Below are positions 27,057 through 62,798 of a DNA stretch of 64,000 bases, in pieces. A program made the position numbers and the translations under genes. Origin of the DNA: Octopus sinensis (lineage: Eukaryota); the NCBI RefSeq assembly GCF_006345805.1, contig NC_043014.1, forward strand, positions 52,700,001 to 52,764,000, in the 5' to 3' direction. Each line of letters starts with the position of its first letter. Position 1 is the first letter of the stretch. Below the pieces are notes generated by a model. The model ran no database searches and was not told where the DNA came from. It saw nothing but the letters and a program-made list of their open reading frames with translations.

Positions 27057-29231
27057 CTAAGATAGACTGCAAAGAAAATTAAAAATATTCACAATGTCAT
27101 CTCTGTGTCCACTTTGGCATTTCAACTGAGGAAAACTTTCTAAATGTTTTGGAATTTCTATATCTTCATGGTTCCTGATCATAAAAATTTGACCAATTTT
27201 AGGTTGTCGATCTTCCATGATTTGTTTGGCATATTCAGTGTGGGTTAAAAACTCTGGTGATATAGTCTTTGAATGTTCTAAATAAATTCCAATATTGCAA
27301 CTGTTTTCTAATATGGTACGAAGGTTTACAGTTTTATATTTTCCCAATATATAGTCACGATTACCAAATGTAACTTTTAACCCAAAGTATTTGTCTAGAT
27401 TCATTCCAATGTTTTCAGCCAGTTCTTCAGAGTTTGGGGATGTTAAAATATAGATATCATAATGAAAGTTAGTTACGATGTCATTCTTTGAACATGCTAA
27501 CCCCGTTTTAGCATTGGTTTCAGAGCCAAATCCAAAACAAAGCTCATAACATTTTCTGAAGAACTCTTTGCTACAGTCAGGTTCTGTTTCTGTGAAATGC
27601 TTTCCTAAATTTACATAAATTTGTTTCATTAGCTTTACATCAACTTCATGGGGCTTAACTTCTGAAAACCTAAGACAAAGAAAAGCTTTAAAATATTGCT
27701 TATTTTTACAAAGGCTTCGTAACTTTCGTGATAATTCACTTTTATCACAATCCACGAGAAGTTTATTATAAAGTTCTTTATTATCACGGAGTTCCTCTAC
27801 TGACTCAATTAATTCCAACAGTTTTTCATTATACTCAATATACCCATGCTCATACACATCAGTCATAATATCCTTTATTCCCCAAATGTCTTTCAGCTTC
27901 TTCTGGAAAGGAAGAAATTCTATAGCAGATTTAATAGCAAGGAAGAACCTATCTGTTCCCTCGTCTCTAAATTCTCTTTTTAAGTCTTCATCATTTTCTT
28001 CGTCTGCTAGTATGAAATATAATCTTCCATACAAAATATGAAAACTAACGTCTCGTATTTTAATATTTGTTTTAAATTGTTCACAACACTCCTGGGCATT
28101 TTCGTATTCTTTCAAAGCCAAATATAACAAAATCAAATCGTAGAGAACAGCTGCATTTTCTGGAGAAAGTTTAAGAGCTTCTTTAAAGTGATATTCTATT
28201 TTGCCAATGAATTCATTCCTTTCCAATTCAGGAATAGTTCTAGGACATTTAATAAGTTTTCCAAGTGTATTTTCTTCCACAGAAAACTCCTTCTTTGCAG
28301 TGAAACATGTGAATTCTGGAATATGTATTTTTTGATAAGTTAATCCAAGATGATGATGAGAAAATGCTGTTGCATTTATTTCGATTGCTTTTACAAACAA
28401 TTCTTTTGCTTTATTAAACTTATATAAAGTCTTATAAAATTTAGCACACTTTTCCAAAACAAAACGGTCATCAGGGGAAAAATGAAGAGCTCTTTGAACA
28501 TATTTTTCACTGAATTCCTGATTCTTCAGAATATTACATTTCCTTGAAGGTCTCAATTTAAACAAAGCTAATAATGCTAACGTTTTCCCCATTAGGATCT
28601 TGTCAATACAGCGAGGAAAAGCACATCGTATTTTCTCTAAGTACTGTACTGCCTCTGTACTAATTTTGCGTTTTTTTTCTTCATCAGAGATCTTTCTTAA
28701 ACAACGATACTGTAACAAAGCTACACCAAATAGACATGAATAATTGTCTGGACAAACATTAGAAGCCTCTTTGTAAAGTAGGATAGCCCTCTCATAATCA
28801 TTGAATGATATTCTTCTTAAACAATAAGCAACATTCATTTTACCTTCTGCTTCTATCTGTTGGAAATCTTCTCTTTTTTCAAGATTGTTAAGATAAACCA
28901 TAACCTCTTTTAACTTATTCATATTTTTATTGTACAGATGAATGAATGCAAGATTGGTTAATGCCAAGAGGTTGTCTGGATTAGTTTCTCGAACTTCATT
29001 GGCTAATCTTTCAGCTTCAATATTCTTATTTAGCTCCCACTGAACAAACACCAAGGTATTCTTGTGGTGAATCTCATCTTCTAAACCAGACACAGTATCG
29101 TTACTTAATGAATTTTCCAGTTTTTTGTAAAGAGACAACCAATGATCTTTGGTGTAGTGAAAATATTCTCCCATTAAATTCGGAAATCTCTGAATTTTTT
29201 CTCTGTACAATTCTCTACTGCTTTCGTCATG
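27057..29231 (-). CDS. Copy B exon 2 (724 aa + stop): IFIT/TTC22-like TPR repeats plus C-terminal TIR-like domain (~27057-27467)
   Basis: IFIT-like motifs: NLLALTNLAFI, DYERAILLYKEA..CPDN..FGVALLQYR, AKFY, FSHHHLGLTY, YHFKEAL, FHILYGR. TIR-like motifs: FHYDIYIL, FGLKVTFGNRDYILG, ILENS. Polypyrimidine tract and CAG acceptor at 29232. Confidence 0.9.
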   Translation of the reverse strand, partial: HDESSRELYREKIQRFPNLMGEYFHYTKDHWLSLYKKLENSLSNDTVSGLEDEIHHKNTLVFVQWELNKNIEAERLANEVRETNPDNLLALTNLAFIHLYNKNMNKLKEVMVYLNNLEKREDFQQIEAEGKMNVAYCLRRISFNDYERAILLYKEASNVCPDNYSCLFGVALLQYRCLRKISDEEKKRKISTEAVQYLEKIRCAFPRCIDKILMGKTLALLALFKLRPSRKCNILKNQEFSEKYVQRALHFSPDDRFVLEKCAKFYKTLYKFNKAKELFVKAIEINATAFSHHHLGLTYQKIHIPEFTCFTAKKEFSVEENTLGKLIKCPRTIPELERNEFIGKIEYHFKEALKLSPENAAVLYDLILLYLALKEYENAQECCEQFKTNIKIRDVSFHILYGRLYFILADEENDEDLKREFRDEGTDRFFLAIKSAIEFLPFQKKLKDIWGIKDIMTDVYEHGYIEYNEKLLELIESVEELRDNKELYNKLLVDCDKSELSRKLRSLCKNKQYFKAFLCLRFSEVKPHEVDVKLMKQIYVNLGKHFTETEPDCSKEFFRKCYELCFGFGSETNAKTGLACSKNDIVTNFHYDIYILTSPNSEELAENIGMNLDKYFGLKVTFGNRDYILGKYKTVNLRTILENSCNIGIYLEHSKTISPEFLTHTEYAKQIMEDRQPKIGQIFMIRNHEDIEIPKHLESFPQLKCQSGHRDDIVNIFNFLCSLS

Positions 29232-31154
29232 CTGAAAGAAAAACAAAATAGTGAATATGTATAAAATGTGTATTAAAAAAAGCATCACCATTATCGTTGG
29301 CAAGATTCCAGGTTACTGAGACAAGGCTAAACCCTCCAAGTTAGATAAGGCTGATGCAGTGGAAGTTCATTTGGGGTTCCAGAGTTTGATGCCTTTCAAA
29401 AAAAAATACTGTCACCAGAAATGGAATTCCAGATGATAGCAGTTTTGTGGAAGAAGGATTGGTTTAGTACTCACTAACGTCTGTGTGTGTGCATGCATGA
29501 TTGCTACATGGCTCTGTATGTATGTAGGTCAGGGGGTCATTGAGTAGCGGAGTCTTGTAGAGGGTCAGCAACTATTACCATCATTTTTCATCAAACTGAT
29601 GCAACACTAGAAATACTTTCAATGGGATTCCAGAAAACCTTCTCTCATGTTTAAGAGACATGTTTTCTTTTTGGTCTTTCATCCAAAAATGTTATAGCTC
29701 CTCTCCCTTCTCCTCTTGCCATTCCTCATTACACTCTTGTTTTCAGTTTTCATATAATTCAAGGCTCTCACTTTACCACTACTACTACTACTGCCACCAC
29801 CACTGAGACCTCTGCTCTTCCATGCTTGTTATTTCTATCCATGCCCACCTGACTTACACATCTCTCCTCCTCCTCCTCACTTCATCATACTCTCTCTCTA
29901 CAAAGAAACTTATCTATTTCTTACAATACTTACCAATCTATACATCAAAATCAAAATTTTTTCAGTGGTCCTTAAAATATTATTGTGAATTCCAAATTTA
30001 CTATTTTATTACGTGGACCCCCCAAAATTCTTCTATGGACTCTCAGGGACCACATGGACCCCAGTTGAGAAGCACTACTCTAGACCATCATACAAAATCT
30101 TTACTTAGAAAGCATAGCCCCAGTCAAAGAGTCTGCCAAAGCAATGGATTAAACATAATTAGAACGAATATGAAGGATTCTCCCTGAAATTATTTTATGA
30201 TCCTTCAGATTAACCATCAGTTTTTTTAGTTTCTTCAAATGTCCACCAGGAAATAGATGTCTGACCAAAAACATTGTATAGAAATGTAATGTTAAAACTA
30301 ATCTACACACGTTCACTTATGTAGATACCACTTCTTCCAACTTTAAATTGTAATCGTCTTCATACATTTAGAAAGTGGGAATAAAACGATAACAACTCCC
30401 ACAAAAGTCTGGGAGTTAAATGCTAAACCTTTTGTCAGTGATAGACATGACTGCAATCTTTACTGTTTGGAAATGTGGGAAATCTTAAAATCATTTAAAT
30501 TAAAATCTAGTCTAGATTGGCTGCATTAAGAATCAAATGCCTACGTTTTATCTTTATAATTTCCTTATACTTTAAACCAGTTCTATAAACCAGTTTTGAG
30601 CACTATGTACATATCTATAATACTACAATATAGACTTTAATTAATATTAATAAGATTCATGGATTATATTCAAGTAGTCAAGCATATTTTAATACTATTA
30701 ATACTAATAACTGATCCTATTTAAGCTACTTTCGTGCACCCTTAGTCCTGACACCAAATACTGATGATTGTAATTTGATATGATTTATAACTTAATAACT
30801 TCATTCAATTTCCTACTAATCTTAGGTGGTCTCTTTATAATGTTTGCTTTTTCCTCCCTAGTTATGCCCTTTCTAATTCTTTATAATTTGTTATAATCCT
30901 TAAAATTCATTTACCATTTTTTAACGTTTACGGTCCCCATAATTTTTCATTATTAGTGACCTGACCCATCTTCTTGCAGGATTTCAATTCAGTTGCTTTA
31001 TTCTCCACAATTCTATGACAAAACTGGTTAATAGAAATGTTGGGAGGGTAACCAATGGGTCTCAATCCTCAGTGAGATTGGCAGACTGGGCGGAGGAGAC
31101 TGTTACTGAGGTCCCACGGTGAGGAAGGCAGTACCAGTAGGCATTGTGGAGTGC

Positions 31155-32475
31155 CTAGAACATGACGACACGCTATGGAACAAAGGAGCCAAATCAAACT
31201 GGGAATTCCAGGGGAATTTCCCTGCTTTCCGTTGATGGAAAAATCCTGGCCCACATCTTTTTCAATATTCTCATCAACAACATCTCCAAGAGCGACTCGC
31301 CTGAAGCCCAGTGTGGCTTCTGCCCAGGCCACAGCACCATGGACATGGTGTTTGCTGTGCGTCAAGTTAAGGAGAAATGTATTGAACAACGGATGGATTT
31401 ATACTCTGTGTTCATAGACCTGACCAAAGCTTTTTGGATCATGCTAACCAAGCATGGCTGCCCACACAAGTTCACCACACTGATAAGACTCTTTCATGGC
31501 AATATGAGCAGTGAAGTTTTTTTGCAATGGTGACCACACCAACTCTTGACATTGGGGCACGAAACAGGGCTGAGTGCTCACCCCCATCTTGTTCAATTTG
31601 TTCTTCACACAGGTCCTGCTTTACACAGTGAAAGACCTAAACCTGGGCATATACATCAAAATATCATTCAGACTGGTCTGTTTTTCCTCCTCCACTCACT
31701 CTCTGCTTGAACCAAGACACTGGAAAAGCTCATCACAGAAGCCCTATTTACAAATGACAGTGTACTTAGGGCACACAAGGAAAATCACCTGCAGACCATT
31801 GTTGATCACTTTGCAGAAGCATGAAAGCTTTTTGGACAGATCATCAGCCTTGACAAAACGGAGACCCTAGTCCAAGCAGCACCAAACACATTTCACTCCA
31901 GCCAAACACCACCATTGAGGGAGTCCAGCTTAAGTGTGTGGAGAGTTTCAGGTACCTTGGTAGCACAGTCTCAGCCGATGGATCATTGAACAGTGAAACA
32001 TTATCCAGAATCCGCAATGCCAGTTAAGAAGCACTTGGAAGACTGAAAATGAAAGTCGTCCAGCAGAAAGGCATCAGACGATCGACAAAGCTCAAGATCT
32101 ACAAGGCTGTAGTCATTTCTACACAATTCTATAGAGGGCAAGCATGGGCCCCCTGGCATCAGCACATCAAACAGCTGGAACAGTTTCACACAAGAGCATT
32201 CACTGGTAGGACAGTGTGACAAACCAACAAAAGTTTGTTCAACAAGCATTCAGTTAATGTTGCTGAAGGCTCAGTTATACTGGACTGACCATGTCATCAG
32301 AATGGCTGACAACTGTGTACTCAGACAGCTGTTCTACAGTGATTTCATGCAGGGCTCATACAAACCAGGAAGGCCTAAACTGAGGTACCAAGGCACCCTG
32401 AAAAGTAACCTAATTATCTTGAGACTAGCAAGAGAAAGACATCATAGGACAGTATCCAGCTCAATTCAGTCAATA
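31155..32475 (+). mobile_element. RTE-clade LINE remnant (unit 2 copy)
   Basis: Track translations identical to 3647-4969. Confidence 0.9.
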
Positions 32476-34113
32476 GACTACTGATGTGATATCTGTGTGC
32501 TTCCAGTTTGGGATTGTGAAGTCACATGTGCTCTCATCACTGTGAACACAGACTTTGTCATCATTAGATACCTATGGACTGCCTTTCATAAATTATTTTG
32601 TTTTCCTTTCCTCTGAAATTTTGCAGAGACTTTCACTATTCCTTGCATTCTTTTTGCTAAAGTTATTTTCCCTGTGTAATAATTAGCTGGATTGGCCTTA
32701 ATTAAAGTTAATAGTTTGTTAGTTCTCCAATAATTAACCAGAGCACTTTAATCATGAGGAATTAATTAAAAGAATAAGTCAAACTGGAATTTATTAACCA
32801 TATCATTCTGGTGCCCTAAACAATCTCACTCAGTAAAGGACTAATTTTGTCTTTTTGAGAACATCAGCAACTGGCTTTGAAAATGTTACGAGAGGGTCAA
32901 ACGTCATGCTTTTGGTACCTGATATATGTTGGGCTATAAGCCTGATGTGACCAGTACCAGCTTTTAGGAGTAATGCTGCAACATTTAATGACACCTTTAG
33001 AACTGATCTGCCATTTAGCTATTCTATAATTGACAACTTCTTTCTATTCTTCACTCGTGGAATTGACTGATTGTAGTACCATCCACTTTAAGGTAAGATC
33101 AACAACAAAAGTGTTCCATCGTGTGAGAGCTAAATATCACTTAATGTACACAGGTAAATGTACATTCTAGTTTTATATCTGTATACCAAAATACATTAAA
33201 TAATACACACACACACACACACAACAACAACTTTACCCATAGAAAGAGTGGCAAAATTACTTGAGTTTATGTGAAACTGGATCAACGTGTGGTGTTGTCC
33301 CAATTTCAGCCAGCCTCCAAGTGTGCACATCTGGAAGCCATTACACAAAAGTATATGAGATGTGAATATCGATCTATTTAACCATGTGACTTCCATATGA
33401 TTCTGACCATTTCTCAATCTTCTTTATTTAGTATTAATTCCAGTATTCAAGACATTACGTGTGCATGATTGCAGTAATATGTATGTTATGCATTGTACAA
33501 GAGAAATGTACATTCCCAACTGAAAGTAAAGAAAGAAAGCTAGCTCATCAGATCAGCAGAACATCATGGTTACAGCATAGTTCTATCAGCAGTTCAACTC
33601 TAAATACACACACGGAACTCATTCATTTAGAATTCTTACAAAAACTGGTATTGCAAATAGAGATGCTATAGAAACAATTCTAACTTTTAATTAGAGACAG
33701 GTAAAAGAATTGTCTCTGTCTTCTTCTTTTCATTGGTATATATATATATATATCATCATCATCATCATCATTTAGCGTCCGCTTTCCATGCTAGCATGGG
33801 TTGGACGGTTCAACTGGGGTCTGTGAAGCCAGGAGGCTGCATCAGGCCCAGTCTGATCTGGCAGTGTTTCTACGGCTGGATGCCCTTCCTAACGCCAACC
33901 ACTCCGTGAGTGTGGTATATATATATATATATATATATATTGCCCTCTAAAGAAACTGTCCAACATTTGAGTCGGTGTTTGAGGTATAAGGACACAGCTG
34001 TGTGCCGGAAGCCAGCTGAAAAACATGTTTTCCTGGGGATAAAAAAAGGTAGTAATATTGTCCTAATTGGGACTGCCAATTTACGTTGACAAATAGATTT
34101 CACTCCCTCCCTC

Positions 34114-34186
<73 letters not shown>

Positions 34187-34461
34187 ATATGGAACAAATA
34201 ATTCCCCAGGAATTTTCACACTGGTGACTGCCATGATTCGGTGCAAAACAAATCATGATGGGTTGGGGCTCTATATCATGGTAACGTATGCTGAGGAAGG
34301 TGAGACTATAATGCCAGTCTAGAAACCAGTCCATGTGAGTTCAAATACTTGAATGCATGCTGAGATTGTCTTAGCCCGTTTGCCTTTGGATGGTTGATTT
34401 CTGTAGTTGTTATCAGCAGGTAGACATACTTAGTATGTCCTTTGATTAATTTTAATACATG

Positions 34462-34537
<76 letters not shown>

Positions 34538-35896
34538 TACAAATATGGAGATAAAGGTTTTCAAGCACAGAATAATGCATGAAAAGTATCGTATCCTTAT
34601 ATTGCAGAAAAATTTGTCAGCAGCCAGCCATGAGACTTGAACACTCATCTCTGTGATTACCAGTCAAGCACTTTATCTTTAAGCTAAGATGCCCAGTGAC
34701 AAATTTTTCTGCAATTTTTAAACTTATAAACTTAGCTTTTTTATAGACGCTGCATGTGAAATTCAGATTACATTATATGTAAACAAAGTTTGCTTTATTG
34801 GAAGTGTTGAGATGTATTGAGACAGACACATATGGAGAGAAATATTTTCAAGTGCAGAATAAAGCATGAACAGTGTTAATAGCATAATATCGCTGTTCAA
34901 GCATTATTCTTAAAGGTAAAGCAAATAACTTTCACCCCTCTCTGTTCCCTTAATATAAAACTAACATTGGTTAAGGATTCCTATCATTCCTAGACAAACA
35001 CTTTTCAGCCACTCACAGATACAGGAAAATATTTAATAGGCTTTCTGTGAAATTATCATATAGCCCCAACTGCAACTGTCACGACCCAGGATCCTCTCCA
35101 CTTAACCAACGCTGTGCGACTAAACCTATCTTATATGAGGCAGAAGTTTCTGCAACCCGAAACAATAATACAACTGATGAGAAGACGTCTACTGGATTAT
35201 GTGAAAGAATTTAGAAATCACTCATGCCAGTCATATAGCCTCCTCCTCCTCCTGACATAGGGACAAAATGAAAACTACAAAGTTCGCTAGCTACGTATGG
35301 ACTTTGAAAGATATTGAAACACTTCATGTGATTAAATGGAAAGTAATCCATACTTGATGTGAAGGGATCGAATGAATGTAGACTTTGTTTGGCTGAAAGA
35401 GCACAGATCCTGTTCTGATCTAAGATCCTAACTCTCTATTGAACTCCAGGTCAGGAATTTTCACTGCTTGCATGCATATGTATAAATACATTTTAAAGAA
35501 TTGGAAAATTCTGCCTATTCCTGACCGACTTGATATCTTTCCAGCCTTATCCTTTAAGGTCAAAGGAGGAGGTTTGCTCTTTTACCTTTTTACTTTTTAT
35601 TTTGGACATTTTAGTTTCAGTTTTTCTCTTTTCCTTTTTCTCTCGTTTACTGTCTGTGTTTTCTATAAGCTGCCTTCTCAGTTTATTTTGCATTTCTTCT
35701 ATCATTCAATTTCTTTAGTTCGTTTGTGCCTGAAGGATATGTTTGAGTTCTCTCCACATATGAAACTATTAGTAGGGTTTTAATGCATCTATTGTGACCT
35801 TTAAATAAATAATATTTATCTCTCACCAGATGAAGTACTTTTTTTTGTTGAATTTTCTTCACGGATCAGTACATTATATATATATATATATATATA

Positions 35897-37166
35897 CGAG
35901 GGGCGTTCAATAAGTAATGCCCCTGACCCACTTGCAGTTGTTTGATCTAGCTGAAATTTTGCATGAGCACTTATTTATACCTCTATAGATTAAGTGGCGA
36001 ATTACAGCTCTGAACTAATTGTGGTTTCTGATTTACAGGTGTTTGAACTGAGTCAAGTGTGAAATGGAGCCTGTTGAGTGTCGAGCAGTAATCTGGTTTT
36101 TGTATTTGAAAGGACGCACACCACGGGAGACTTTTGATGAAATGGAAGTAACTTATGGTGATGATGCCCCATCATATGACCTTGTAAAACGCTGGCATTG
36201 TGAATTCAAACATAGTCGGAACTCTGTGGAAACAGCTCCCAGATCTGGTCGCCCCCTTCTGCCGTTGATGAGACGTCTGTCCGTCAAGTTGAGGCTGCCA
36301 TTTTGGAAGGCCAATGCATAACTATTCGCCAAATAGCCCATAAGGTCAAGATTAGTACCGGGTCTGTGGAAACTATCATTCATGACCATTTGCATATGCA
36401 AAAGGTGTCTGCCAGATGGATTTCCAGGTTGCTCACATCTTTCCAGAAGCAAGAATGCGTTGAGTGCTCGAGGATGAATTTGGAGATGTGCCAAGAAGAT
36501 GAGTCAAAATTTTTCAAAAGACTGATCACACAGGATAAAACCTGGGTCCATCACTATGACCCATAGACCAAAGCCCAGTCAATGCAGTGAAAGCACCGTG
36601 ACTCACCTCCTCCAAAGAAGGCAAGGGTGCAGCCCTCCGCTGACAAGGTTATGCTCACAGTCTTCTGGGACCAGGACGGAGTAGTGATGACAGATTTCCT
36701 GGCAAAGGGTACCACAATTACAGGAGCCTATTATGCTTCACTTTTGAGGAAATTAAGAGAAGCTATCAAAATCAAGAGGCGGAGCTAGATCAGCAAAGGC
36801 ATCCTCCTCCTGCAGGACAACGCTCCGGTCCACAACTCGCGTGTCGCCAGATCAGAAGCACAGGCGTGCAGCTATGAACTCCTCCCCTTGCACCCTCTGA
36901 TTTTCACCTCTTCCCAGCCATGAAGTTGATTTTGAAAGGAAAGCGTTTCCCAGATGATGCAGCCTTGATTTCTGAAGTCACGTCATGGTTGGAGGACCAT
37001 GCTGGGGTCTTCTACAAAAACGGTCTCCAGAGCTGTATCAAACGATGGGAGAAATGCATAACTCTGGGTAGTTCCTATGTAGGAAAAGACTAATAACTGT
37101 GCCAAGTTTTGTTGCTCTACTGCTATGGGAAGTGGGTCAGGGGCATTACTTATTGAACGCCCCTCG
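35897..37166 (+). mobile_element. Same mariner in unit 2
   Basis: Same TIRs and length; only two substitutions noticed versus 8397-9666. Confidence 0.95.
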
Positions 37167-37202
<36 letters not shown>

Positions 37203-38004
37203 TAATTACAACAAATATATTACATCTTGGACACAGAGTCTTCAATAACGTTTTTTGTTACTCCCCTGAATCAGAGGGTAAAATAAACCCTTATAGACCC
37301 AACGAGGCCTAACTAGGAAATGGAGAGATCCAATTTTCCAGTAAGCAGCACATGAAGTGGATGCGTTTAGAAAACACTTCTTTACAGCTAGTTAATGTGC
37401 CAGGTTTCTTATAGTCCTTAAGAATTTTGGCTCTCTCTGCAACGACCACTTCCATTAATATACAGGCCCCAGATGATTGATTAATTTCCACCTGATGTCA
37501 CATGGCGTCCCTTGTTCTTTGAGGTGCCAATGACGTGACAAACCGTCTTTCTGGGACTCTGATGGTGGTTAAGAAAACATTGCTTGAACAAAGTACTAGC
37601 AGAACCAATATATTTACACACATGGGGTGTAGTACTATTCACACCCTTGGTAATATATGGCATGGGTCTGGTCATCCCATCAGTGTCAAAGATAAATATT
37701 TGGTCATCTTCTGAGGTGGCAAAACTGGGAAAGGGGGATACCTCCTCCAAGCTGCTGGTCCTGAATAGGTCATTATTTCTAGGTGTGGTGTTTGTACTGG
37801 TGGTAACATACATTGTGGGCCTCGAGTTCTGAGCGTTTTCTCACGTCTGCGACATAGATATTTTAAATTTTGTATTTATGTAGAGTCTGACGAGCTGTCC
37901 ACAAGGCTTTGCTTTGTGGATGCAAAACCTTGCGTAAGTCTATGTCCAAGATATAAAATTTCTGCTGTAACAATTACTGCTCTATTCTTTAAAGTGTGCT
38001 TCTT

Positions 38005-38062
<58 letters not shown>

Positions 38063-38351
38063 TAACTATATAATCAATAAAAACATATATCAGAAAAGAA
38101 GCACATTCTAAAGAATGGAGCAGTAATTATGACGACAAATATTTTAATTTTAGACAAAGAGTTACCAAAGGCTGCTTATCCACAAAGCCAAAGCCTTGTG
38201 GACAGCTCATCAGACTAGACAAAGGCAAAAAACATTTAACTTTCTACGTGGCGGACGTTAAGGAAAAGCTCAGAAATCGAGATTTAAGTCTTAACATCTC
38301 AAAATGGTAATGAGGAAGGGTTGTCTCCCCTGAAGCAGAGGATTAAAAACA

Positions 38352-38471
38352 CCCTTACAGACCCGGAAAAGCCCTTAAAGACCCGAAAACGCCCTTACAG
38401 ACTCGAAAACGCCCTTACAGACTCGAAAACGCCCTTACAGACCCGAAAACACCCTTACAGACCCGAAAAGG
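38352..38471. repeat. 20-bp minisatellite, 6 units (copy B intron)
   Basis: Same unit as at 10824. Confidence 0.95.
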
Positions 38472-39165
38472 CCCAATCAGACAAACGGGGATCTCTAATT
38501 TTCCAGTTGTTTACACTTGAAGTGGACACATTTAAAGAAAACTTATTCTAAATAAATGTGTGTAAAGTGGATGGATTCTCTTCTCTTCCTTGTTGTTGAC
38601 TTTGCTTTTGTCAAGTGTCAGATATTTTTTCGTCTTCCTCGGCAATTCTAATGAGAATTTTATGACCAGCTCCGATAGTAAACTTTCGGGAACTTTATTC
38701 ATTCATGTTTGTTTTTTCTTGGTTAAAGTCAGTTAGGTGCAGTTGTTTCCTTCTTGGGGAGTTTCTGTCTACTAATTACTTCGATAATCTCAACAGACCA
38801 AAGGTTTCGTGCGTTCGAATGCGCAAAGGATGTGGATTGGTTATTTTGACATTTCAAACTTTTCTATGGCACTAATCCTGTTAGAAACACACGATTATTT
38901 CTTCCCACATACTTACACGCACCACATGTCTAGACATGCAAGTGTTATGCACAAAGATGCATACAAATGCCAAATCGGCACAATTTCCAGGTAGAATATT
39001 TTATCTGTCATTGCTTCGCAGCTGTTTTGATGGCGTGTTTTATGTGTTTCTTTCTTGTTTTCATCTGCCACGCACACTTTGATATCCAAGACCGACTTTC
39101 ATTCTGTTCACAGCTTCCGTCACCGACACACACACACACACACAGTCATTCACACACGTACACAG

Positions 39166-39234
<69 letters not shown>

Positions 39235-39435
39235 AATCTGTTTTATGCTTTATATGTTTTTGTTAGTATTGTTATATTTAAAGAATTATTGAAATAAACT
39301 TGTTATACATACATATCTATACACACATACATAGCTGCCTACTTACATACATACACACGTACATATACATACCTACACACTAAACAACACAGAGTTAATA
39401 TTTGTTCATGTTTGTAAATATGTTGATATACTTAC

Positions 39436-39486
39436 AAGTAGAATTCCATCAAATTTTTCAATAATTTCCTCGATTTCTTCAGCCAT
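39436..39486 (-). CDS. Copy B first coding exon, MAEEIEEIIEKFDGILL
   Basis: ATG at 39486-39484, GTAAGT donor at 39435-39430, phase 0; one L/F difference from A and C. Confidence 0.75.
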
Positions 39487-39837
39487 TTTCTGTCTCTCTC
39501 TTTTTTTTATCCTTTAAAGCAAATTTATAAAACTAAACAAAATAGTTTTCTTTCCTTGTTGTCGACTTTTTTTCTGGTATATTTTGCCAAAAAGAAAATG
39601 TAAATTTCTATAAATGATATATTATATATAAAAATGTTCAATGCAGTTGAATGTGTCCGATCAACAAATATTTTCTAACAACACAGTGAGTGTCTCTTCC
39701 CAGAAACGAAACCCGATTGCAATATTGGATACTGTGAACGGATTCGAAAAATATAGTTGGACTGAAGAAGTGAGACAACTGAAGAATTAGTAAAAACTGT
39801 TTTAACGAAACTTAGAGAATGGCAGAAGTAAACGATG

Positions 39838-39883
39838 TGAAAGTGTGAAAGTGAAAGTTTTGTAGAAAAGAAAATCACTTCCG
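39838..39883. promoter_or_regulatory. ISRE/IRF-E-like plus ETS-like motifs upstream of copy B
   Basis: GAAAGTGAAAGT at 39847-39858; CACTTCCG at 39876-39883. Confidence 0.55.
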
Positions 39884-40717: not shown

Positions 40718-40756
<39 letters not shown>

Positions 40757-40827
40757 AAATTTCTGTGTCTCTTTTTATGTTTGTTGCCTCAAACATTTAC
40801 TTGCATATCTAGACATGCTCATATATA

Positions 40828-47500: not shown

Positions 47501-50500
47501 TTGTATGTGTGTGTGTGTGTGTGGCTTCCCCCCCACACACACACCAAGATCCTTATCCAGAAAGTTATCTCTTTTTTATATGCAGGCTTATATGGGAAAC
47601 AAACCACTTTTATAAACAAAAAAATCAAATTAAGGGAGAAGGAACTAAAGTATAAGGAATAACTACCTGAAACGGGAAATGAAATCTCGTATATTTCACC
47701 AGAAAACCCCCATCTAAATGGCTTTGACTTAATATATACATATATATAACCACACATACACATACATGTGTATGTGTGTGCGTGTGTGTGTGTGTGTGTG
47801 TGTACTCCTTTTCTCTTAATTTTTAGTTTAATTGTCACCAGTGACAAGGGTAGTAAAGAAAAGGAAATTGTTGTCGTCTCTTGTGTAAATGGTCATCGTT
47901 TGTATCATCAGAATGTTTAACAAATTTTGAAGGTTCCAGATATCGCAGTCTTTTGAAGCTTATGAATTAAGGAGCCATGTTCCTCCTTCACGAATCCAAG
48001 TGATACTTTGGTCCAGTCTGGTTGCGATATAACCTGGAGCACCGACAATAACAGGTACGAAGTTAAACGTGTATCTTGGATACCAGATTTCCAAACTTCA
48101 CATCAACGATCCATATGAATCCTTTTCTTGTATTTTTCTTACCACATGTAAGGAATGGTATGGAAGCAGTCGGCTCGTTAACCGTGTATAACTTTTCTCA
48201 ACTTCAGTAAGCACTGACAACAGAGTATATACAAATGGGGCATTAAACTAGTTAAGACTAACGACAATCCTCGGGTCTAATCTCAAAGGTGTCTAATATA
48301 CCAAATTTGAACATTTTCACTTAATTTTAAAATTTCAAAAAGTGAAGGGAAACAGAAAAGGTCCAAGCCGGGTTTTTCTTTTTTTCAAATAAATTCACGA
48401 GCGAAATACGTGGGCAGAACTAATATACATTCAAATAAAAACAGCATTTGTCTGTCACCTACTTTTACTTTTTCTTATTTTAAATATTTGTCATGTTTAA
48501 CAAAAGGCACCAATCTTCCATTGTTACGTTGTATCACAAACACATTACTTACGTAAAATAGTTTAAACACTTTCTACGTATTTCCTCTTCAATAACTATG
48601 AACCACTTTCTTTATATTATGTACTAAGTTATATTACAGAAGATCTCTAACCACCAAGCTCCTTGCTTCATGTTATTGCATTCAATTATTTCCATGAAGA
48701 CATTTAATCACTAACGATGCTGGCGATGTAAAAAATATATGAAAACTGAAATATATTAATATTTGGTCCCTCTTGTCTTCACATGCAGCCAGCCAAACTA
48801 CTGGGAAATTCCAACGAAGTGTTAATTATCAAAGCCCGCACACTTAACCTCCATTCATGCACATATAACTAATTGAAGTACGTGTAGTGTACATTTGTAA
48901 CGAGTTTTGACATGGTCAGTTACTGTAGCAGTTCAATACTGTTTAGAACGAACAAATAATACTTTTTAAATGTACCAGTTTCACTTTCTCAAACTAACAA
49001 GTGTGGACGGGTCAATAGCTTCTGTGCTCCCACTGCAGTAGGCATCCGTTGATTTCAAGGGACCACGGATGTGTGCCTGAGAATTTGTGTTAGCTGTTGA
49101 TAGTGGTGCCACATCTGCTGTGGTGGCTGTACAGGCTTACATGCGAGTGGCAGTCACACAGACAATGGCTGCATTCGAAGAAGCCCTCTGCCATCACTAT
49201 TGATCCGTTGTGGTAAGTTCCAGGTTCTCTTCCCCTCACTTCATTCTCTTTTTGCAGTTTTTGGCTCCAGTATGGGCAGTCATTTGCAACCTCCTCCCAT
49301 TTCTGGATGTCCACATCTATTAACTTCATCTCTCTCTCTCTTGCTGATGTCCTTGTCCGAAGAAAAGCTAGTTTTGTGTGTGTGTGTGCGCGCTTTGTGT
49401 TATCTATTAACTAATATCAGTGTAGTCCTTCGTTATTTGAAGTTGAGAATAAACCCCTAATTTATTGATAATTCAAATGTTTTATTACTAAAGATGGAAT
49501 GGATACAGTTAGTTTACCAAATCAAAACCATTTTTTGCACATTTTTAAATTCCTGATTTCAAGGCAGATGACTCATATGGCACAGTATCGTTTCTAACTC
49601 ATTTGTTCTGTGGCACATCCTTAATGCCACAGCAGAGATGATGGATGGAGTTACTGCAACAGTAAATAAATGAAGTGAAACACTGAAATATTTTGTAGAA
49701 TCTGCTAGATTGTATTTTCCAATCTGTGGCTTTTGAGACATTCTAGGGTCTGCGGATAACAGACAAGGTCTTTGACTTTGTTAGTGACCTACTTCAAACA
49801 TCAGATGGTGTTTGGGAAGTCACCTGGTTGTTTCTAGCATGTGTTATATTTGAGTGGGGTGTCTGTATACCCCTGGTTATTCACTGATTTCTTTTCTCTT
49901 TCTCATTCTTCTTACTATTTGCTTTTGTCAGTTATGTTCTTTTCCACTGGAGGAAAGTCGTCATCATTTAACACCTGTTTTCCATACTGGCATGGGTTAA
50001 ACGGTTAGACAGGAACTGCTAACACCAACCACTTTGTAGAGTGTAGTGGGTGCTTTTGTTATTGCACCGGTAACCGCGAGGCCACTATCTAACTTGCAAA
50101 ATTGGTTAAGTGTACCCCTAATTCATGTTGTAGACATACAGGCAATCCTCAACATTGTTTCATTATAACATTCATGTGAAGTAATATAGAATAGTGTGAA
50201 ATATAAATCCACCTAGGGTACCTAAAGTACATACCACAAAAATGAACTGTTGTTTACTATAATTTTTCCTTTCTTTTGGAACTTGTTTTCAATTCAGTAA
50301 AATAGAAAGAAATATATAAACGAGATTGAACAACAATACAAATCATTTTCTTTTTTTGTTTAGTTTTGTTTATCAATATTTAGCAAACAACATCAACATA
50401 TTCATCATATACACAGGTTGGCTGCCTTGAAACCAGCAGGCAGTGGTACCTACATGGTATCAGATTAAGGGCTTTATCAAAGGACACAGTATTTCAGTTT

Positions 50501-51286
50501 GAATACACTTAACACACCACATCTTCACTTCAAAATATTCCCTGTAAATCAATACAAATTGGTTAATGGAGAAAGAATAAACATTAATTGAAATATCCTG
50601 TGAAATTTTAAAGGCTTTTGCACAAAAATTACGTCACTGCTACTTGCAAAGAACTGGAATTTACAATTAAACACATTCACGTGTCTTGAGGTGAAGGGTT
50701 GTCGAGATTGTCATTTTCTGGAGGTAAAGGACCATGAGAATCCTTATTTTCATTTTGAAAGGTAATTACAATATCAAGAACTGGTGCAGATGATGATGAT
50801 GCTGACAACAACATTCCAAAACATTGCTGCATTGTCTACACAATAGACATAGAAGTTCAATTCCATCTGAGGCCAATGAGTCAAACGTTGTCCAGGGAAT
50901 GCTTTTCTCCACACACTACATGAAACTTTAAACTATGTCAATCTTTGAAACTGGGAAGCCAAACCTTACTATAACCACAATATAAAATATATTTAAACAT
51001 ATATTAGAACTATATAAAGTGTGTGCATTTTCCTTCTTTTATTTTATATACACACACATATATATACATACATATATATATATAAATATATATATGTGTG
51101 TGTATATACTTTATTCTAAACAAAACAATCCAGCAAACAGGAACATGAAACTCCTAGTGACAGTTTTTGGGATATTTTTGCTGCTTTTTAATAAAGCATA
51201 TTCCTCAACCTCTGGTACTCGAGTACTATTTTTTCCACCTTCTTTCACATTTATGTGCTTACTCTGGTATATATATATATATATAT

Positions 51287-51356
<70 letters not shown>

Positions 51357-51950: not shown

Positions 51951-51991
<41 letters not shown>

Positions 51992-53878: not shown

Positions 53879-56053
53879 CTAAGATAGACTGCAAAGAAAA
53901 TTAAAAATATTCACAATGTCATCTCTGTGTCCACTTTGGCATTTCAACTGAGGAAAACTTTCTAAATGTTTTGGAATTTCTATATCTTCATGGTTCCTGA
54001 TCATAAAAATTTGACCAATGTTAGGTTGTCGATCTTCCATGATTTGTTTGGCATATTCAGTGTGGGTTAAAAACTCTGGTGATATAGTCTTTGAATGTTC
54101 TAAATAAATTCCAATATTGCAACTGTTTTCTAATATGGTACGAAGGTTTACAGTTTTATATTTTCCCAATATATAGTCACGATTACCAAATGTAACTTTT
54201 AACCCAAAGTATTTGTCTAGATTCATTCCAATGTTTTCAGCCAGTTCTTCAGAGTTTGGGGATGTTAAAATATAGATATCATAATGAAAGTTAGTTACGA
54301 TGTCATTCTTTGAACATGCTAACCCCGTTTTAGCATTGGTTTCAGAGCCAAATCCAAAACAAAGCTCATAACATTTTCTGAAGAACTCTTTGCTACAGTC
54401 AGGTTCTGTTTCTGTGAAATGCTTTCCTAAATTTACATAAATTTGTTTCATTAGCTTTACATCAACTTCATGGGGCTTAACTTCTGAAAACCTAAGACAA
54501 AGAAAAGCTTTAAAATATTGCTTATTTTTACAAAGTTTTCGTAACTTTCGTGATAATTCACTTTTATCACAATCCACGAGAAGTTTATTATAAAGTTCTT
54601 TATTATCACGGAGTTCCTCTACTGACTCAATTAATTCCAACAGTTTTTCATTATACTCAATATACCCATGCTCATACACATCAGTCATAATATCCTTTAT
54701 TCCCCAAATGTCTTTCAGCTTCTTCTGGAAAGGAAGAAATTCTATAGCAGATTTAATAGCAAGGAAGAACCTATCTGTTCCATCGTCTCTAAATTCTCGT
54801 TTCAACTCTTCATCATTTTCTTCTTCTGCTAGTATGAAATATAATCTTCCATACAAAATGTGAAAACTAACGTCTTGTATTTTAATATTTGTTTTAAATT
54901 GTTCACAACACTCCTGGGCATTTTCGTATTCTTTCAAAGCCAAATATAACAAAATCAAATCGTAGAGAACAGCTGCATTTTCTGGAGAAAGTTTAAGAGC
55001 TTCTTTAAAGTGATATTCTATTTTGCCAATGAATTCATTCCTTTCCAATTCAGGAATAGTTCTAGGATATTTAATAAGTTTTCCAAGTATATTTTCTTTC
55101 AGAGAAAACTTCTTCTTTGCAGTGAAATATGTGAATCCTGGAATATGTATTTTTAGATAAGTTATTCCAAGATGATGATGAGAAAATGCTGTTGCATTTA
55201 TTTCGATTGCTTTTACAAACAATTCTTTTGCTTTATCAAACTTATATAAAGTCTTATAAAAGTTAGCACACTTTTCCAAAACAAAACGGTCATCAGGGGC
55301 AAAATGAAGAGCTCTTTGAACATATTTTTCACTGAATTCCTGATTCTTCAGAATATTACATTTCCTTGAAGGTTCCAATTTAAACAAAGCTAATAATGCT
55401 AACGTTTGCCCCATTAGGATCTTGTCAATACAGCGAGGAAAAGCACATCGTATTTTCTCTAAGTACTGTACTGCCTCTGTACTAATTTTGCGTTTTTTTT
55501 CTTCATCAGAGATCTTTCTTAAACAACGATACTGTAACAAAGCTACACCAAATAGACATGAATAATTGCCCGGACAAACACTGGAAGCCTCTTTGTAAAG
55601 TTTGATAGCCCTCTCATAATCATTGAATGATATTCTTCTTAAACAATAAGCAACATTCATTTTACCTTCTGCTTCTATCTGTTGGAAATCTTCTCTTTTT
55701 TCAAGATTGTTAAGATAAACCATAACCTCTTTTAACTTATTTATATTTTCATTGTACAGATGAATGAATGCAAGATTGGTTAATGCTAAGAGGTTGTCTG
55801 GATTAGTTTCTCGAACTTCATTGGCTAATCTTTCAGCTTCAATATTCTTATTTAGCTCCCACTGAATAAACACCAAGGTATTCTTGTGGTGAATCTCATC
55901 TTCTAAACCAGACACAGTATCATTACTTAATGAATTTTCCAGTTTTTTGTAAAGAGACAACCAATGATCTTTGGTGTAGTGAAAATATTCTCCCATTAAA
56001 TTCGGAAATCTCTGAATTTTTTCTCTGTACAATTCTCTTCTGCTTTCGTCATC
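53879..56053 (-). CDS. Copy C exon 2 (724 aa + stop): IFIT-like TPR plus TIR-like domain (~53879-54289)
   Basis: Open ORF with 28 aa differences from copy B by hand count; acceptor ttttctttcag|GAT at 56054/56053. Confidence 0.9.
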   Translation of the reverse strand, partial: DDESRRELYREKIQRFPNLMGEYFHYTKDHWLSLYKKLENSLSNDTVSGLEDEIHHKNTLVFIQWELNKNIEAERLANEVRETNPDNLLALTNLAFIHLYNENINKLKEVMVYLNNLEKREDFQQIEAEGKMNVAYCLRRISFNDYERAIKLYKEASSVCPGNYSCLFGVALLQYRCLRKISDEEKKRKISTEAVQYLEKIRCAFPRCIDKILMGQTLALLALFKLEPSRKCNILKNQEFSEKYVQRALHFAPDDRFVLEKCANFYKTLYKFDKAKELFVKAIEINATAFSHHHLGITYLKIHIPGFTYFTAKKKFSLKENILGKLIKYPRTIPELERNEFIGKIEYHFKEALKLSPENAAVLYDLILLYLALKEYENAQECCEQFKTNIKIQDVSFHILYGRLYFILAEEENDEELKREFRDDGTDRFFLAIKSAIEFLPFQKKLKDIWGIKDIMTDVYEHGYIEYNEKLLELIESVEELRDNKELYNKLLVDCDKSELSRKLRKLCKNKQYFKAFLCLRFSEVKPHEVDVKLMKQIYVNLGKHFTETEPDCSKEFFRKCYELCFGFGSETNAKTGLACSKNDIVTNFHYDIYILTSPNSEELAENIGMNLDKYFGLKVTFGNRDYILGKYKTVNLRTILENSCNIGIYLEHSKTISPEFLTHTEYAKQIMEDRQPNIGQIFMIRNHEDIEIPKHLESFPQLKCQSGHRDDIVNIFNFLCSLS

Positions 56054-57810: not shown

Positions 57811-57846
<36 letters not shown>

Positions 57847-58340: not shown

Positions 58341-58385
<45 letters not shown>

Positions 58386-60699: not shown

Positions 60700-60761
<62 letters not shown>

Positions 60762-61050
60762 TAACTATATAATCAATAAAAACATATATCAGAAAAGAAG
60801 CACATTCTAAAGAATGGAGCAGTAATTATGACGACAAATATTTTAATTTTAGACAAAGAGTTACCAAAGGCTGCTTATCCACAAAGCCAAAGCCTTGTGG
60901 ACAGCTCATCAGACTAGACAAAGGCAAAAAACATTTAACTTTCTACGTGGCGGACGTTAAGGAAAAGCTCAGAAATCGAGATTTAAGTCTTAACATCTCA
61001 AAATGGTAATGAGGAAGGGTTGTCTCCCCTGAAGCAGAGGATTAAAAACA

Positions 61051-62483: not shown

Positions 62484-62546
<63 letters not shown>

Positions 62547-62747
62547 AATCTGTTTTATGCTTTATATGTTTTTGTTAGTATTGTTATATTTAAAGAATTA
62601 TTGAAATAAACTTGTTATACATACATATCTATACACACATACATAGCTGCCTACTTACATACATACACACGTACATATACATACCTACACACTAAACAAC
62701 ACAGAGTTAATATTTGTTCATGTTTGTAAATATGTTGATATACTTAC

Positions 62748-62798
62748 AAGTAGAATTCCATCCAATTTTTCAATAATTTCCTCGATTTCTTCAGCCAT
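62748..62798 (-). CDS. Copy C first coding exon, MAEEIEEIIEKLDGILL
   Basis: ATG at 62798-62796, GTAAGT donor at 62747-62742, phase 0. Confidence 0.75.

What the first reader, a model, noticed from the sequence alone, without database searches (positions are those of the whole stretch)
27057..62798. Tandem array of IFIT-like TPR-TIR fusion genes: a candidate one-protein RNA sensor-effector
Seen: three near-identical minus-strand genes whose exon 2 encodes about 590 aa of TPR-like repeats followed by a ~136-aa TIR-like domain. Established knowledge: vertebrate IFIT1/5 are TPR-only proteins that bind 5'-ppp or cap0 RNA and have no signalling domain. From memory, their motifs (NYERAK..F.K.LE..P.NP, YAAKFYRRK, LHHQ.GLCY, HF..A, HYGRF) occur here in the same order as DYERAI..YKEA..CPDN, CAKFYKTL, HHHLGLTY, HFKEA and LYGRLY. 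TIR domains act as signalling scaffolds or NADases. Inference: a nucleic-acid-recognising solenoid wired directly to a TIR output, conceptually like bacterial TPR-sensor/TIR-effector defences, expanded in tandem in a probable cephalopod. I do not recall a characterised IFIT-TIR fusion, but could not search.
Basis: partly seen in the sequence, partly recalled or inferred. Interest (0 to 1): 0.92.

Follow-up and report, generated by a model that had tools for sequence, protein, structure and literature searches.

The report
Octopus IFIT-like genes with TIR-like tail
Three tandem octopus genes encode a protein whose front part clearly resembles vertebrate antiviral IFIT RNA-binding proteins and whose conserved tail weakly resembles a TIR immune-signalling domain, so it may be a one-piece sensor-plus-signaller, but the TIR identity is not proven.

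Summary
The window is Octopus sinensis chromosome CM016876.1. It carries three minus-strand, two-exon genes that are 96-98% identical, lying in a ~27-kb tandem segmental duplication. Copy A lies outside the stated coordinates and is cut by the window start.

The IFIT reading is supported. IFIT5, IFIT1 and IFIT2 are the best PDB sequence hits (E down to 1e-8, about 270-310 colinear residues). The 13 best Foldseek hits to the confident part of an AlphaFold model are all IFIT1 or IFIT5.

The TIR reading is suggestive only:
- Pfam, PADLOC, NCBIfam and PDB sequence searches find nothing for the tail.
- An exhaustive search of 1.84 billion proteins finds only the O. bimaculoides orthologue.
- AlphaFold gives pLDDT below 50 there, and Foldseek finds nothing.
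- An animal-TIR profile does align TIR box 1 through box 2 (YDIYIL...RDYILGK), at about 13 bits. Only 1 of 20,000 shuffles reaches that score.

New finding: the TPR-only octopus "IFIT-like" paralogues carry a decayed copy of this tail after their stop codon. The fusion is therefore ancestral. The tail also evolves three times more slowly than the TPR part. An ISRE-like element lies about 360 bp upstream of each gene. I found no publication describing this architecture.

The parts
27057..29231 (-). Copy B, exon 2 (aa 18-741 plus stop); product = P0001, 741 aa
   Evidence: ORF; acceptor cag|CAT at 29231; exact match to P0001
39436..39486 (-). Copy B, coding exon 1 (MAEEIEEIIEKFDGILL), donor GTAAGT; intron of about 10.2 kb
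27732..29231 (-). Copy B, IFIT-like TPR clamp (aa 18-517)
   Evidence: phmmer against PDB hits IFIT5/1/2; AF2 pLDDT about 80; Foldseek top 13 hits are IFIT1/5; Pfam finds TPR_19/14/11 only
27483..27731 (-). Copy B, extra helical linker (aa 518-600); starts where the TPR-only paralogues stop
   Evidence: alignment A1; AF2 predicts helices but pLDDT is below 50
27060..27482 (-). Copy B, C-terminal alpha/beta domain (aa 601-741), TIR-like: box 1 YDIYIL, box 2 RDYILGK
   Evidence: animal-TIR HMM 12.9 bits, 1 of 20,000 shuffles as high; hhalign in register with TLR2/MyD88/TLR1/TLR4/TLR3; no curated-library hit; AF2 gives alternating beta/alpha at pLDDT 42.6
53879..56053 (-). Copy C, exon 2; product = P0014 (29 aa differences from B, 27 of them in aa 1-441)
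62748..62798 (-). Copy C, coding exon 1; intron of about 6.7 kb (shorter through deletions)
53882..54304 (-). Copy C, TIR-like C-terminal domain
   Evidence: same as copy B; 1 aa difference (K695N)
1..1727 (-). Copy A, exon 2, only aa 18-592 inside the window (tail is off the window); product = P0017/P0012
11837..11887 (-). Copy A, coding exon 1
39847..39858 (+). ISRE/IRF-E-like element GAAAGTGAAAGT (part of GTGAAAGTGTGAAAGTGAAAGTTT), about 360 bp upstream of copy B ATG; same element at 12248-12259 (A) and 63158-63169 (C)
   Evidence: also in O. vulgaris, one mismatch in O. bimaculoides
39622..39630 (-). TATA-like TATATATAA about 140 bp upstream of copy B ATG (candidate only)
   Evidence: read
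26888..26893 (-). AATAAA polyadenylation signal about 165 nt after copy B stop
   Evidence: read
24301..51095 (.). Middle unit of the ~27-kb tandem segmental duplication (units about 1-24200, 24301-51095, 51113-64000+)
   Evidence: self-blastn, 98-99.4% identity

Best explanation
These are three recently duplicated paralogues of an Octopus-lineage gene for a cytosolic innate-immune protein built from two modules encoded in a single exon.

Module 1 (aa 18-517) is a genuine relative of the vertebrate IFIT clamp. This is shown by sequence and by fold.

Module 2 (aa about 518-741) is a helical linker plus a ~140-aa alpha/beta domain. This domain is the most constrained part of the protein. It is most likely a very divergent TIR domain of the animal TLR/MyD88 type; that is inferred from a weak but colinear box 1 to box 2 match.

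Inferred mechanism:
1. The IFIT-like solenoid binds a ligand. By analogy this is the 5' end of non-self RNA, though with altered specificity, because the pocket is only partly conserved.
2. Ligand-driven closure or oligomerisation brings the TIR-like tails together.
3. The tails then signal through homotypic TIR assembly. A scaffold type seems more likely than an NADase, because no catalytic Glu could be placed.

An IRF/ISRE-like promoter element suggests virus- or IRF-inducible expression. The fast-evolving TPR part (dN/dS about 1) and the tandem copies fit an arms-race sensor. The fused form is ancestral in the octopus family, and the TPR-only 'IFIT5-like' paralogues lost the tail through a shared stop codon.
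For: **IFIT relationship**
- phmmer against PDB: IFIT5 1.2e-8 (272 colinear residues), IFIT1 4e-6 (about 310 residues), IFIT2 1e-3. Other natural TPR proteins score much weaker and only over short stretches.
- AF2 gives pLDDT about 80 for aa 20-510. The 13 best Foldseek hits are IFIT1/IFIT5, with target-normalised TM 0.53-0.60.
- The gene has two coding exons with a very short first one, and the genes are in tandem, as in vertebrate IFITs (PMC3688568).

**Tail is real and constrained**
- The ORF is intact in all copies in three species.
- Nonsynonymous divergence is 3-fold lower than in the TPR part (0.033 vs 0.099, Fisher P=1e-4), with similar dS.
- The homologous stretch after the stop of the TPR-only paralogues is decayed: 71.6% nt identity, at least 7 stops, frameshifts.

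**TIR-likeness**
- HMMs of animal TIRs score 10-12.9 bits, reached by 1-4 of 20,000 composition-matched shuffles. This holds for three subsets, two of them sharing no sequences.
- Five of seven animal TIRs align in one register in hhalign.
- The six fused-gene ORFs are the six best of 2,562 six-frame pieces.
- AF2 secondary structure is beta-alpha-beta-alpha-beta-alpha-beta...alpha.

**Promoter**
- GAAAGTGAAAGT lies upstream of all three copies.
Against: - No TIR hit in Pfam, PADLOC or NCBIfam even at E<=10, and none in PDB by sequence or by profile.
- Plant and SARM1 TIR profiles, and a 120-sequence real TIR profile, give no signal.
- hhalign P-values (0.006-0.016) are matched by one unrelated control (flavodoxin, P=0.02, over a short stretch).
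- Both AF2 models of the tail are unreliable (pLDDT about 30 and 42.6), and Foldseek found no TIR.
- The second half of the domain and TIR box 3 do not align, and the BB-loop Pro is Leu.
- dN/dS of the tail (about 0.5) is not significantly below 1 on its own (P=0.19).
- Six of 13 mapped IFIT5 RNA-contact residues are non-conservative, including R253E (PMC9677429).
- There is no expression evidence: all nine members of the 90% cluster carry only protein-database sources (NCBI, UniRef, nr), each seen on one chromosome-scale contig, so none points to a transcript.
- The ISRE-like site has a mismatch in O. bimaculoides and is no better conserved than its surroundings.
Confidence: 0.5

Rival explanations
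1. The TPR part is IFIT-like, but the tail is a lineage-specific alpha/beta domain that is not a TIR. It could be an oligomerisation, localisation or enzymatic module found only in Octopus. On this reading the protein is an IFIT-type binder with an accessory domain, not a sensor wired to TIR signalling.
For: An exhaustive phmmer search of 1.84 billion representatives finds only the O. bimaculoides orthologue. All curated libraries and PDB searches are negative. AF2 cannot fold the tail, and Foldseek finds nothing. The TIR signal covers only the first ~60 residues, and the hhalign P-values overlap those of a control.
Against: The box 1/box 2 match is colinear and has TIR-like spacing: 26 residues from beta-A to beta-B and 28 from beta-B to beta-C. 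It recurs with independent TIR subsets at about 1e-4 against shuffles. It also picks out exactly these ORFs in a six-frame scan.
Confidence: 0.3
2. The solenoid does not bind RNA. It is a protein-protein scaffold (as IFIT3 or ordinary TPR adaptors are), so the protein is a TIR-pathway adaptor or regulator rather than a nucleic-acid sensor.
For: Six of 13 mapped IFIT5 RNA-contact residues are changed non-conservatively. These include the charge reversal R253E and loss of F337 and F339 (PMC9677429). TIR-TPR and many other TIR-domain architectures with proposed adaptor roles are known in molluscs and other invertebrates (PMC9334734, PMC6321704).
Against: R186, Y156, H287 and L291 are identical, and K150, Y250 and R260 are conservatively replaced. 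The best fold matches are RNA-bound IFIT1 and IFIT5 over the full clamp.
Confidence: 0.25
3. The tail is not functional: a recent stop-codon loss lets translation run into a former 3' UTR, or it is an annotation artefact.
For: The homologous sequence is untranslated and decayed in the TPR-only paralogues. dN/dS of the tail is not significantly below 1. There is no transcript evidence.
Against: A 224-codon open frame in 34% GC DNA is kept in at least 6 gene copies in 3 species, while the paralogous copy has at least 7 stops and frameshifts. The tail has the lowest nonsynonymous rate in the protein (P=1e-4). It shows alpha/beta periodicity and TIR-like motifs. The TPR-only stop is shared by O. 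sinensis and O. bimaculoides paralogues, which fits a single loss event.
Confidence: 0.03

Closest known systems
[quoted passage not shown]
   Same: The TPR clamp is colinear over about 300-500 residues and gives the best sequence and fold matches. Several RNA-pocket residues are shared. The gene has two coding exons with a tiny first one, the genes are in tandem clusters, and there is an ISRE-like promoter motif (PMC3688568 for the vertebrate features).
   Different: Identity is only about 16-21%. Six of 13 mapped RNA-contact residues are changed. The first coding exon has 17 codons rather than 1.7. The host has no known interferon. A ~225-aa C-terminal extension is absent from IFITs. The literature places the origin of IFIT in jawed vertebrates (PMC3688568).
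Octopus TPR-only 'IFIT5-like / IFIT1B-like' paralogues (P0003-P0009, 474-510 aa)
   Same: They share 51-56% identity over the whole TPR part, the same exon structure, and the same chromosome in O. sinensis (49.1 Mb vs 52.7 Mb).
   Different: They stop after ...KSEL and carry only a decayed remnant of the tail in the 3' flank. The equivalent of IFIT5 K150 is Thr, not Arg.
Animal TIR domains of the TLR/MyD88 type
   Same: Box 1-like YDIYIL, box 2-like RDYILGK, similar strand spacing, and predicted alternating beta/alpha elements.
   Different: The match is below the threshold of every curated model. The BB-loop Pro is Leu, there is no recognisable box 3 (FW), and the domain is about 10-15 residues shorter. 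The second half cannot be aligned, and the position of a catalytic Glu cannot be placed.
Invertebrate TIR-domain-containing proteins with repeat modules (e.g. TIR-TPR of Aplysia, ecTIR-DC families, oyster TIR-STING)
   Same: The theme is a TIR fused to a sensor or repeat module, expanded in marine invertebrates (PMC9334734, PMC6321704; PDB 6wt6 listed).
   Different: In the texts I could read, those TPR parts are not reported as IFIT-like, and their TIR domains are recognisable by standard profiles. I could not compare sequences directly.
Prokaryotic conflict systems pairing TPR repeats with TIR or other NAD+-targeting effectors
   Same: The logic is conceptually the same: a repeat-based sensor or platform joined to a swappable effector (PMC8195603).
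   Different: No homology was shown. Those are bacterial, multi-gene or STAND-containing systems. The resemblance is by analogy only.

Membership tests
IFIT family | Significant, long colinear sequence similarity to IFIT1/2/3/5, better than to other TPR proteins | tested here: met
   IFIT5 E=1.2e-8 (272 residues), IFIT1 4e-6 (about 310 residues), IFIT2 1e-3. With the family profile, IFIT5 scores 1.1e-9 and IFIT1 2.8e-8. The next natural protein, CDC27, scores 2e-6 over about 70 residues.
IFIT family | Clamp-shaped all-helical TPR fold of about 470-490 residues | tested here: met
   AF2 model of aa 20-510 at pLDDT about 80. Foldseek ranks 1-13 are all IFIT1/IFIT5, with 500-554 aligned columns and TM (target) 0.53-0.60. 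The rmsd of 7-9 A means subdomain orientation is not settled.
IFIT family | Conserved 5'-end RNA-binding pocket (IFIT5 K150, Y156, R186, Y250, R253, Y254, R260, H287, Q288, L291, D334, F337, F339) | tested here: inconclusive
   Identical: Y163, R193, H310, L314. Conservative: R157, F274, K284. Changed: E277, K278, H311, S373, N376, A378 (mapping; residue list from PMC9677429 table 5). The N-terminal contacts E33/T37/Q41 could not be aligned.
IFIT family | Two-exon gene with a minimal first coding exon; tandem gene cluster | tested here: met
   A 17-codon exon 1 plus one large exon; three tandem copies. Vertebrate pattern per PMC3688568.
IFIT family | ISRE-driven, interferon- or virus-inducible expression | not testable with these tools
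   An ISRE/IRF-E-like GAAAGTGAAAGT lies about 360 bp upstream of each ATG, but there are no expression data. The transcription start is unknown.
IFIT family | Phylogenetic grouping with vertebrate IFITs rather than TTC22 or other TPR families | not tested
No TTC22 or other invertebrate TPR sequences were in hand.
TIR domain (Pfam TIR/TIR_2 superfamily) | Match to a curated TIR profile | tested here: not met
   No Pfam, PADLOC or NCBIfam hit at E<=10. No PDB sequence or profile hit.
TIR domain (Pfam TIR/TIR_2 superfamily) | Box 1 and box 2 motifs with correct spacing; similarity beyond chance to TIR profiles | tested here: inconclusive
   The animal-TIR HMM scores 12.9 bits over HMM positions 2-63, reached by 1 of 20,000 shuffles. 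Other subsets score 10.0-10.2 bits, reached by 1-4 of 20,000. The six-frame scan supports this. Plant and SARM1 profiles are negative, and one control reached hhalign P=0.02.
TIR domain (Pfam TIR/TIR_2 superfamily) | Flavodoxin-like five-stranded parallel beta-sheet fold | tested here: inconclusive
   AF2 gives alternating beta/alpha elements, but pLDDT is 42.6 (tail alone) and about 30 (full length). Foldseek finds no match at E<=0.001.
TIR NADases (SARM1, plant and bacterial TIRs) | Catalytic glutamate in the alpha-C region; NAD+ cleavage | tested here: inconclusive
   The alpha-C region (SPEFLTHTEYAKQ) contains Glu residues. The only alignment reaching it puts Gln at the catalytic column, at low confidence. 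There is no similarity to SARM1 or plant TIR profiles. Activity is not testable here.

The most novel reading that the evidence does not exclude
The IFIT clamp predates vertebrates. In the cephalopod lineage it began as a single-chain cytosolic pattern-recognition receptor: an IRF-inducible RNA 5'-end sensor with a built-in TIR output domain. The effector-only (TPR-only) form arose later by loss of the tail. That would make this the first IFIT-family protein that signals rather than only sequesters RNA, in an animal without interferon.
Probability: 0.2. Interest if true: 0.85.

Novelty: new variant of a known kind. Interest (0 to 1): 0.62.

Why it matters
IFITs are described as a jawed-vertebrate, interferon-linked invention (PMC3688568). 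A bona fide IFIT-type clamp in octopus, with an ISRE-like promoter motif, would push the origin of this antiviral module much deeper, or else point to convergence or gene transfer.

If the conserved tail is a TIR, the protein would join ligand recognition and signalling in one chain. That logic is known from bacterial and plant immunity but not for IFITs. The decayed tail behind the TPR-only paralogues also gives a clear natural experiment in gain and loss of an output domain.

It would offer a tractable entry point into cephalopod antiviral immunity, which is almost unstudied.

Tried and rejected
**Tail: searches that found nothing**
- Pfam, PADLOC and NCBIfam scans of the tail, alone and with the linker.
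- PDB phmmer and PDB profile search of the tail.
- Word-index homologue search with the tail: no scored candidate, not even the protein itself, so I treat that search as uninformative.
- Exhaustive phmmer of the last 200 aa: only the O. bimaculoides orthologue.

**Tail: structure attempts that failed**
- AF2 of the full protein and of the tail alone gave an unusable tail.
- Foldseek with the tail model gave only noise.

**Tail: TIR profile comparisons**
- hhalign against a 120-sequence real TIR alignment (mostly plant and MyD88), and against plant, RPS4 and SARM1 subsets, gave no signal.
- hmmsearch with those profiles gave no signal.
- I deliberately did not feed AF2 an alignment of the tail with real TIRs, because that would be circular.

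**Readings rejected**
- Read-through into a 3' UTR or an annotation artefact. The tail's open frame is kept in every fused-gene copy examined in three species, whereas the homologous stretch behind the TPR-only paralogues is decayed, and the tail has the lowest dN.
- Other genes in the introns or intergenic DNA. Only transposon-like fragments and repeat-derived ORFs are present.

**Other checks**
- Rfam scan: no RNA family.
- ISRE conservation in O. bimaculoides and in the paralogue promoters: not convincingly conserved.
- Extent of the array beyond the window: no further copy within 10 kb on either side, but the spacing is 14 kb, so this stays open.

Full report
**1. What is in the sequence**

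ORF listing finds two 748-codon minus-strand ORFs at 27057-29303 and 53879-56125. tblastn with one of them finds a third copy at 3-1799, cut by the window start.

Each ORF starts with an intronic read-in that ends in a canonical acceptor, ttgtttttctttcag|CAT, at 29231. A 17-codon first coding exon (MAEEIEEIIEK[F/L]DGILL, donor GTAAGT) lies at 39436-39486, 62748-62798 and 11837-11887. An AATAAA follows the stop of copy B by about 165 nt.

The spliced products are 741 aa. They are identical to database proteins P0001 (copy B), P0014 (copy C) and, over the part inside the window, P0017 (copy A).

Look-ups place the window at Octopus sinensis CM016876.1:52,700,001-52,764,000. The three genes lie in tandem ~27-kb units that are 98-99.4% identical. 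Copy C has a shortened intron.

The rest of the unit contains only transposon-like fragments and repeat-derived ORFs, and no Rfam family.

**2. The TPR part is IFIT-like**

- Pfam sees only generic TPR families.
- Against all PDB sequences the best hits are IFIT5 (E=1.2e-8, 272 colinear residues), IFIT1 (4e-6, about 310 residues) and IFIT2 (1e-3).
- A profile of 16 octopus proteins keeps IFIT5 and IFIT1 on top. The next natural protein, CDC27, is about 1000-fold weaker and matches only two repeats.
- AlphaFold2 on that alignment gives pLDDT about 80 for aa 20-510.
- Foldseek against the PDB returns IFIT1 and IFIT5 as ranks 1-13, with 500-554 aligned columns and target-normalised TM 0.53-0.60.
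- The gene structure (tiny first coding exon plus one large exon) and the tandem arrangement parallel vertebrate IFIT loci (PMC3688568).

I mapped the IFIT5 residues whose mutation affects RNA binding (table 5 of PMC9677429) through the phmmer alignment:
- Identical: Y156, R186, H287 and L291 (Y163, R193, H310, L314 here).
- Conservative: K150, Y250 and R260 (R157, F274, K284).
- Changed: R253, Y254, Q288, D334, F337 and F339 (E277, K278, H311, S373, N376, A378).

RNA 5'-end binding is therefore plausible but not implied. The specificity would probably differ.

**3. The tail**

The TPR-only octopus paralogues (P0003-P0009, 474-510 aa, named IFIT5-like or IFIT1B-like by NCBI) end at ...KSEL. 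That corresponds to aa 517 of the fused protein. The fused proteins continue for 224 residues: predicted helices (aa 518-600), then an alpha/beta region (aa 601-741).

Nothing curated recognises this tail:
- Pfam, PADLOC and NCBIfam find nothing at E<=10.
- PDB by sequence and by profile finds nothing.
- An exhaustive phmmer search of 1.84 billion representative proteins returns only the O. bimaculoides orthologue.
- AlphaFold fails on it, with pLDDT about 30 in the full-length model and 42.6 for the tail alone.
- Foldseek with the tail model gives only noise.

The low-confidence model does show alternating strand and helix: E20-25, H27-35, E46-50, H62-71, E76-80, H87-103, E110-113, H138-150.

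**4. Testing the TIR idea directly**

MyD88, L6 and RPS4 were validated by the database hits they retrieved, and TLR2 by 1FYW at E=8e-101. SARM1 was not separately validated (no listed hit is named SARM1).

Negative results:
- A broad profile of 120 real TIRs (mostly plant and MyD88) shows nothing.
- Plant and SARM1 profiles show nothing.

Positive but weak results:
- hhalign against TLR2 or MyD88 alone gives P=0.006 and 0.016 over 58 columns. TLR1, TLR4 and TLR3 (from memory) give their best alignment in the same register.
- One unrelated control (flavodoxin) reached P=0.02 on an 8-column stretch. hhalign alone is therefore not decisive.
- An HMM of eight animal TIRs scores the tail at 12.9 bits. 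It aligns HYDIYILTSPNSEELAEN-IGMNLD-KYFGLKVTFGNRDYILGKYKTVNLRTILENSCNIGI to TIR positions 2-63, which run from box 1 through the box 2 RDxxPG motif to beta-C.
- Only 1 of 20,000 composition-matched shuffles reaches that score.
- The TLR2+MyD88+SARM1 subset gives 10.0 bits (3 of 20,000 shuffles). An independent five-sequence subset without TLR2 or MyD88 gives 10.1 bits (1 of 20,000).
- I scanned all 2,562 stop-to-stop pieces of the window and six related loci. The six best hits are the six fused-gene exon-2 ORFs (10.2-12.0 bits; the next scores 8.4).

The BB-loop proline is Leu, box 3 is not recognisable, the second half does not align, and no catalytic Glu can be placed.

My reading is that a divergent TIR is the best single hypothesis, at roughly two chances in three. 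It fails the curated-profile membership test and lacks structural confirmation.

**5. The tail is functional and ancestral**

The DNA immediately after the stop codon of two O. sinensis TPR-only paralogues (locus L001, 3.6 Mb away on the same chromosome) is homologous to the whole tail-coding region:
- 497 of 694 aligned nucleotides are identical (71.6%). This equals the 72.0% identity of the TPR-coding parts.
- It is broken by at least 7 in-frame stops, 4-, 14- and 2-nt deletions and frameshifts, and it ends in a (GA)n run.
- One NCBI model (P0009) even splices part of this remnant.

The O. bimaculoides TPR-only paralogue has the same stop and keeps only the start of the remnant.

The fused architecture is therefore ancestral for the octopus family. 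The TPR-only genes arose by a truncating mutation that predates the species split.

In the fused genes the tail is intact in every copy examined in three species. Between O. sinensis and O. bimaculoides:
- Nonsynonymous divergence is 0.033 in the tail against 0.099 in the TPR part (Fisher P=1e-4).
- Synonymous divergence does not differ (P=0.5).
- dN/dS is about 0.5 in the tail and about 0.85-1.06 in the TPR part.
- The tail's value is not significantly below 1 on its own (P=0.19).

Between copies B and C, 27 of 29 amino-acid differences fall in aa 1-441. Nine of them lie in the poorly modelled loop at aa 314-346.

**6. Regulation**

GAAAGTGAAAGT, within three GAAAGT-type repeats, lies about 360 bp upstream of the ATG of each copy. 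This is about 220 bp upstream of a TATA-like run. It is present in O. vulgaris and has one mismatch in O. bimaculoides. The whole promoter is about 88% conserved, so conservation adds little. It matches the ISRE/IRF-E consensus that drives vertebrate IFITs (PMC3688568). Its function here is untested.

**7. Comparison with what is known, and novelty**

The published view is that IFITs arose in jawed vertebrates (PMC3688568). I found no paper on invertebrate IFIT-like proteins fused to a TIR. TIR proteins with many partner modules, including TIR-TPR, are known in molluscs and other invertebrates (PMC9334734, PMC6321704). TPR-plus-effector logic is common in prokaryotic conflict systems (PMC8195603).

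The proteins themselves already sit in RefSeq as uncharacterised models. I therefore class this as a new variant of known kinds, not a new category.

**8. Verdict**

- The TIR part is plausible but unproven.
- The sensor-effector mechanism is an inference.
- The most useful new result is the decayed tail behind the TPR-only paralogues. It shows that the fusion is old, selected and repeatedly dispensable.

Noticed in passing
L001:17499-18130 and L001:2090-2720 (O. sinensis CM016876.1, about 49.13 Mb); L004:10118-10300 (O. bimaculoides): The TPR-only 'IFIT5-like' paralogues carry a decayed copy of the fused genes' C-terminal coding region directly after their stop codon. It is 71.6% identical at nucleotide level, has at least 7 stops and several frameshifts, and ends in (GA)n. 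The stop position is shared between species.
   Followed up: yes
window 12248-12259, 39847-39858, 63158-63169 (also 4530/32045, 17464/44343, 22100/48977): ISRE/IRF-E-like GAAANNGAAA(C/G)T motifs: 9 hits against 0.63 expected, which reduce to 4 unique sites multiplied by the duplication. One site lies about 360 bp upstream of each gene's ATG, one in intron 1 and two in the intergenic DNA.
   Followed up: partly
window 61045-61794 (and 38346-38474): A 20-bp minisatellite (AAAACGCCCTTACAGACCCG) in intron 1 has about 6 copies in gene B and about 37 copies in gene C. It creates the spurious 259-aa repeat ORF at 61020-61799.
   Followed up: partly
window aa positions 314-346 of copies B and C (about 28245-28343 and 55067-55165): Nine of the 29 amino-acid differences between copies B and C cluster in a 33-residue loop that AlphaFold models poorly. 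This loop aligns to the indel-rich IFIT5 294-314 region near the pivot. It may be a hot spot of diversification.
   Followed up: no
window 31162-31533, 40880-41197, 42853-43158: Degenerate transposon fragments lie in intron 1 and the intergenic DNA: reverse-transcriptase-like and mariner/Tc1-transposase-like ORF pieces. They were identified by eye from the translations only.
   Followed up: no
P0011 (O. vulgaris, 600 aa) and P0012/P0015/P0018 (O. sinensis isoform models): One O. vulgaris model ends at aa about 600 (…ETNAKPGVSMFKE), just before the TIR-like domain. This could be a tail-less isoform or a copy with a frameshift. The other models start inside intron 1 or at Met37.
   Followed up: no
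L001:6895-7469 and 22258-22832: A cluster of three same-strand ISRE-core motifs (CTTTCnGTTTC) lies within about 570 bp, 2.5-3.1 kb upstream of the ATG exon of each TPR-only paralogue. It could mark an upstream promoter or a non-coding first exon.
   Followed up: no
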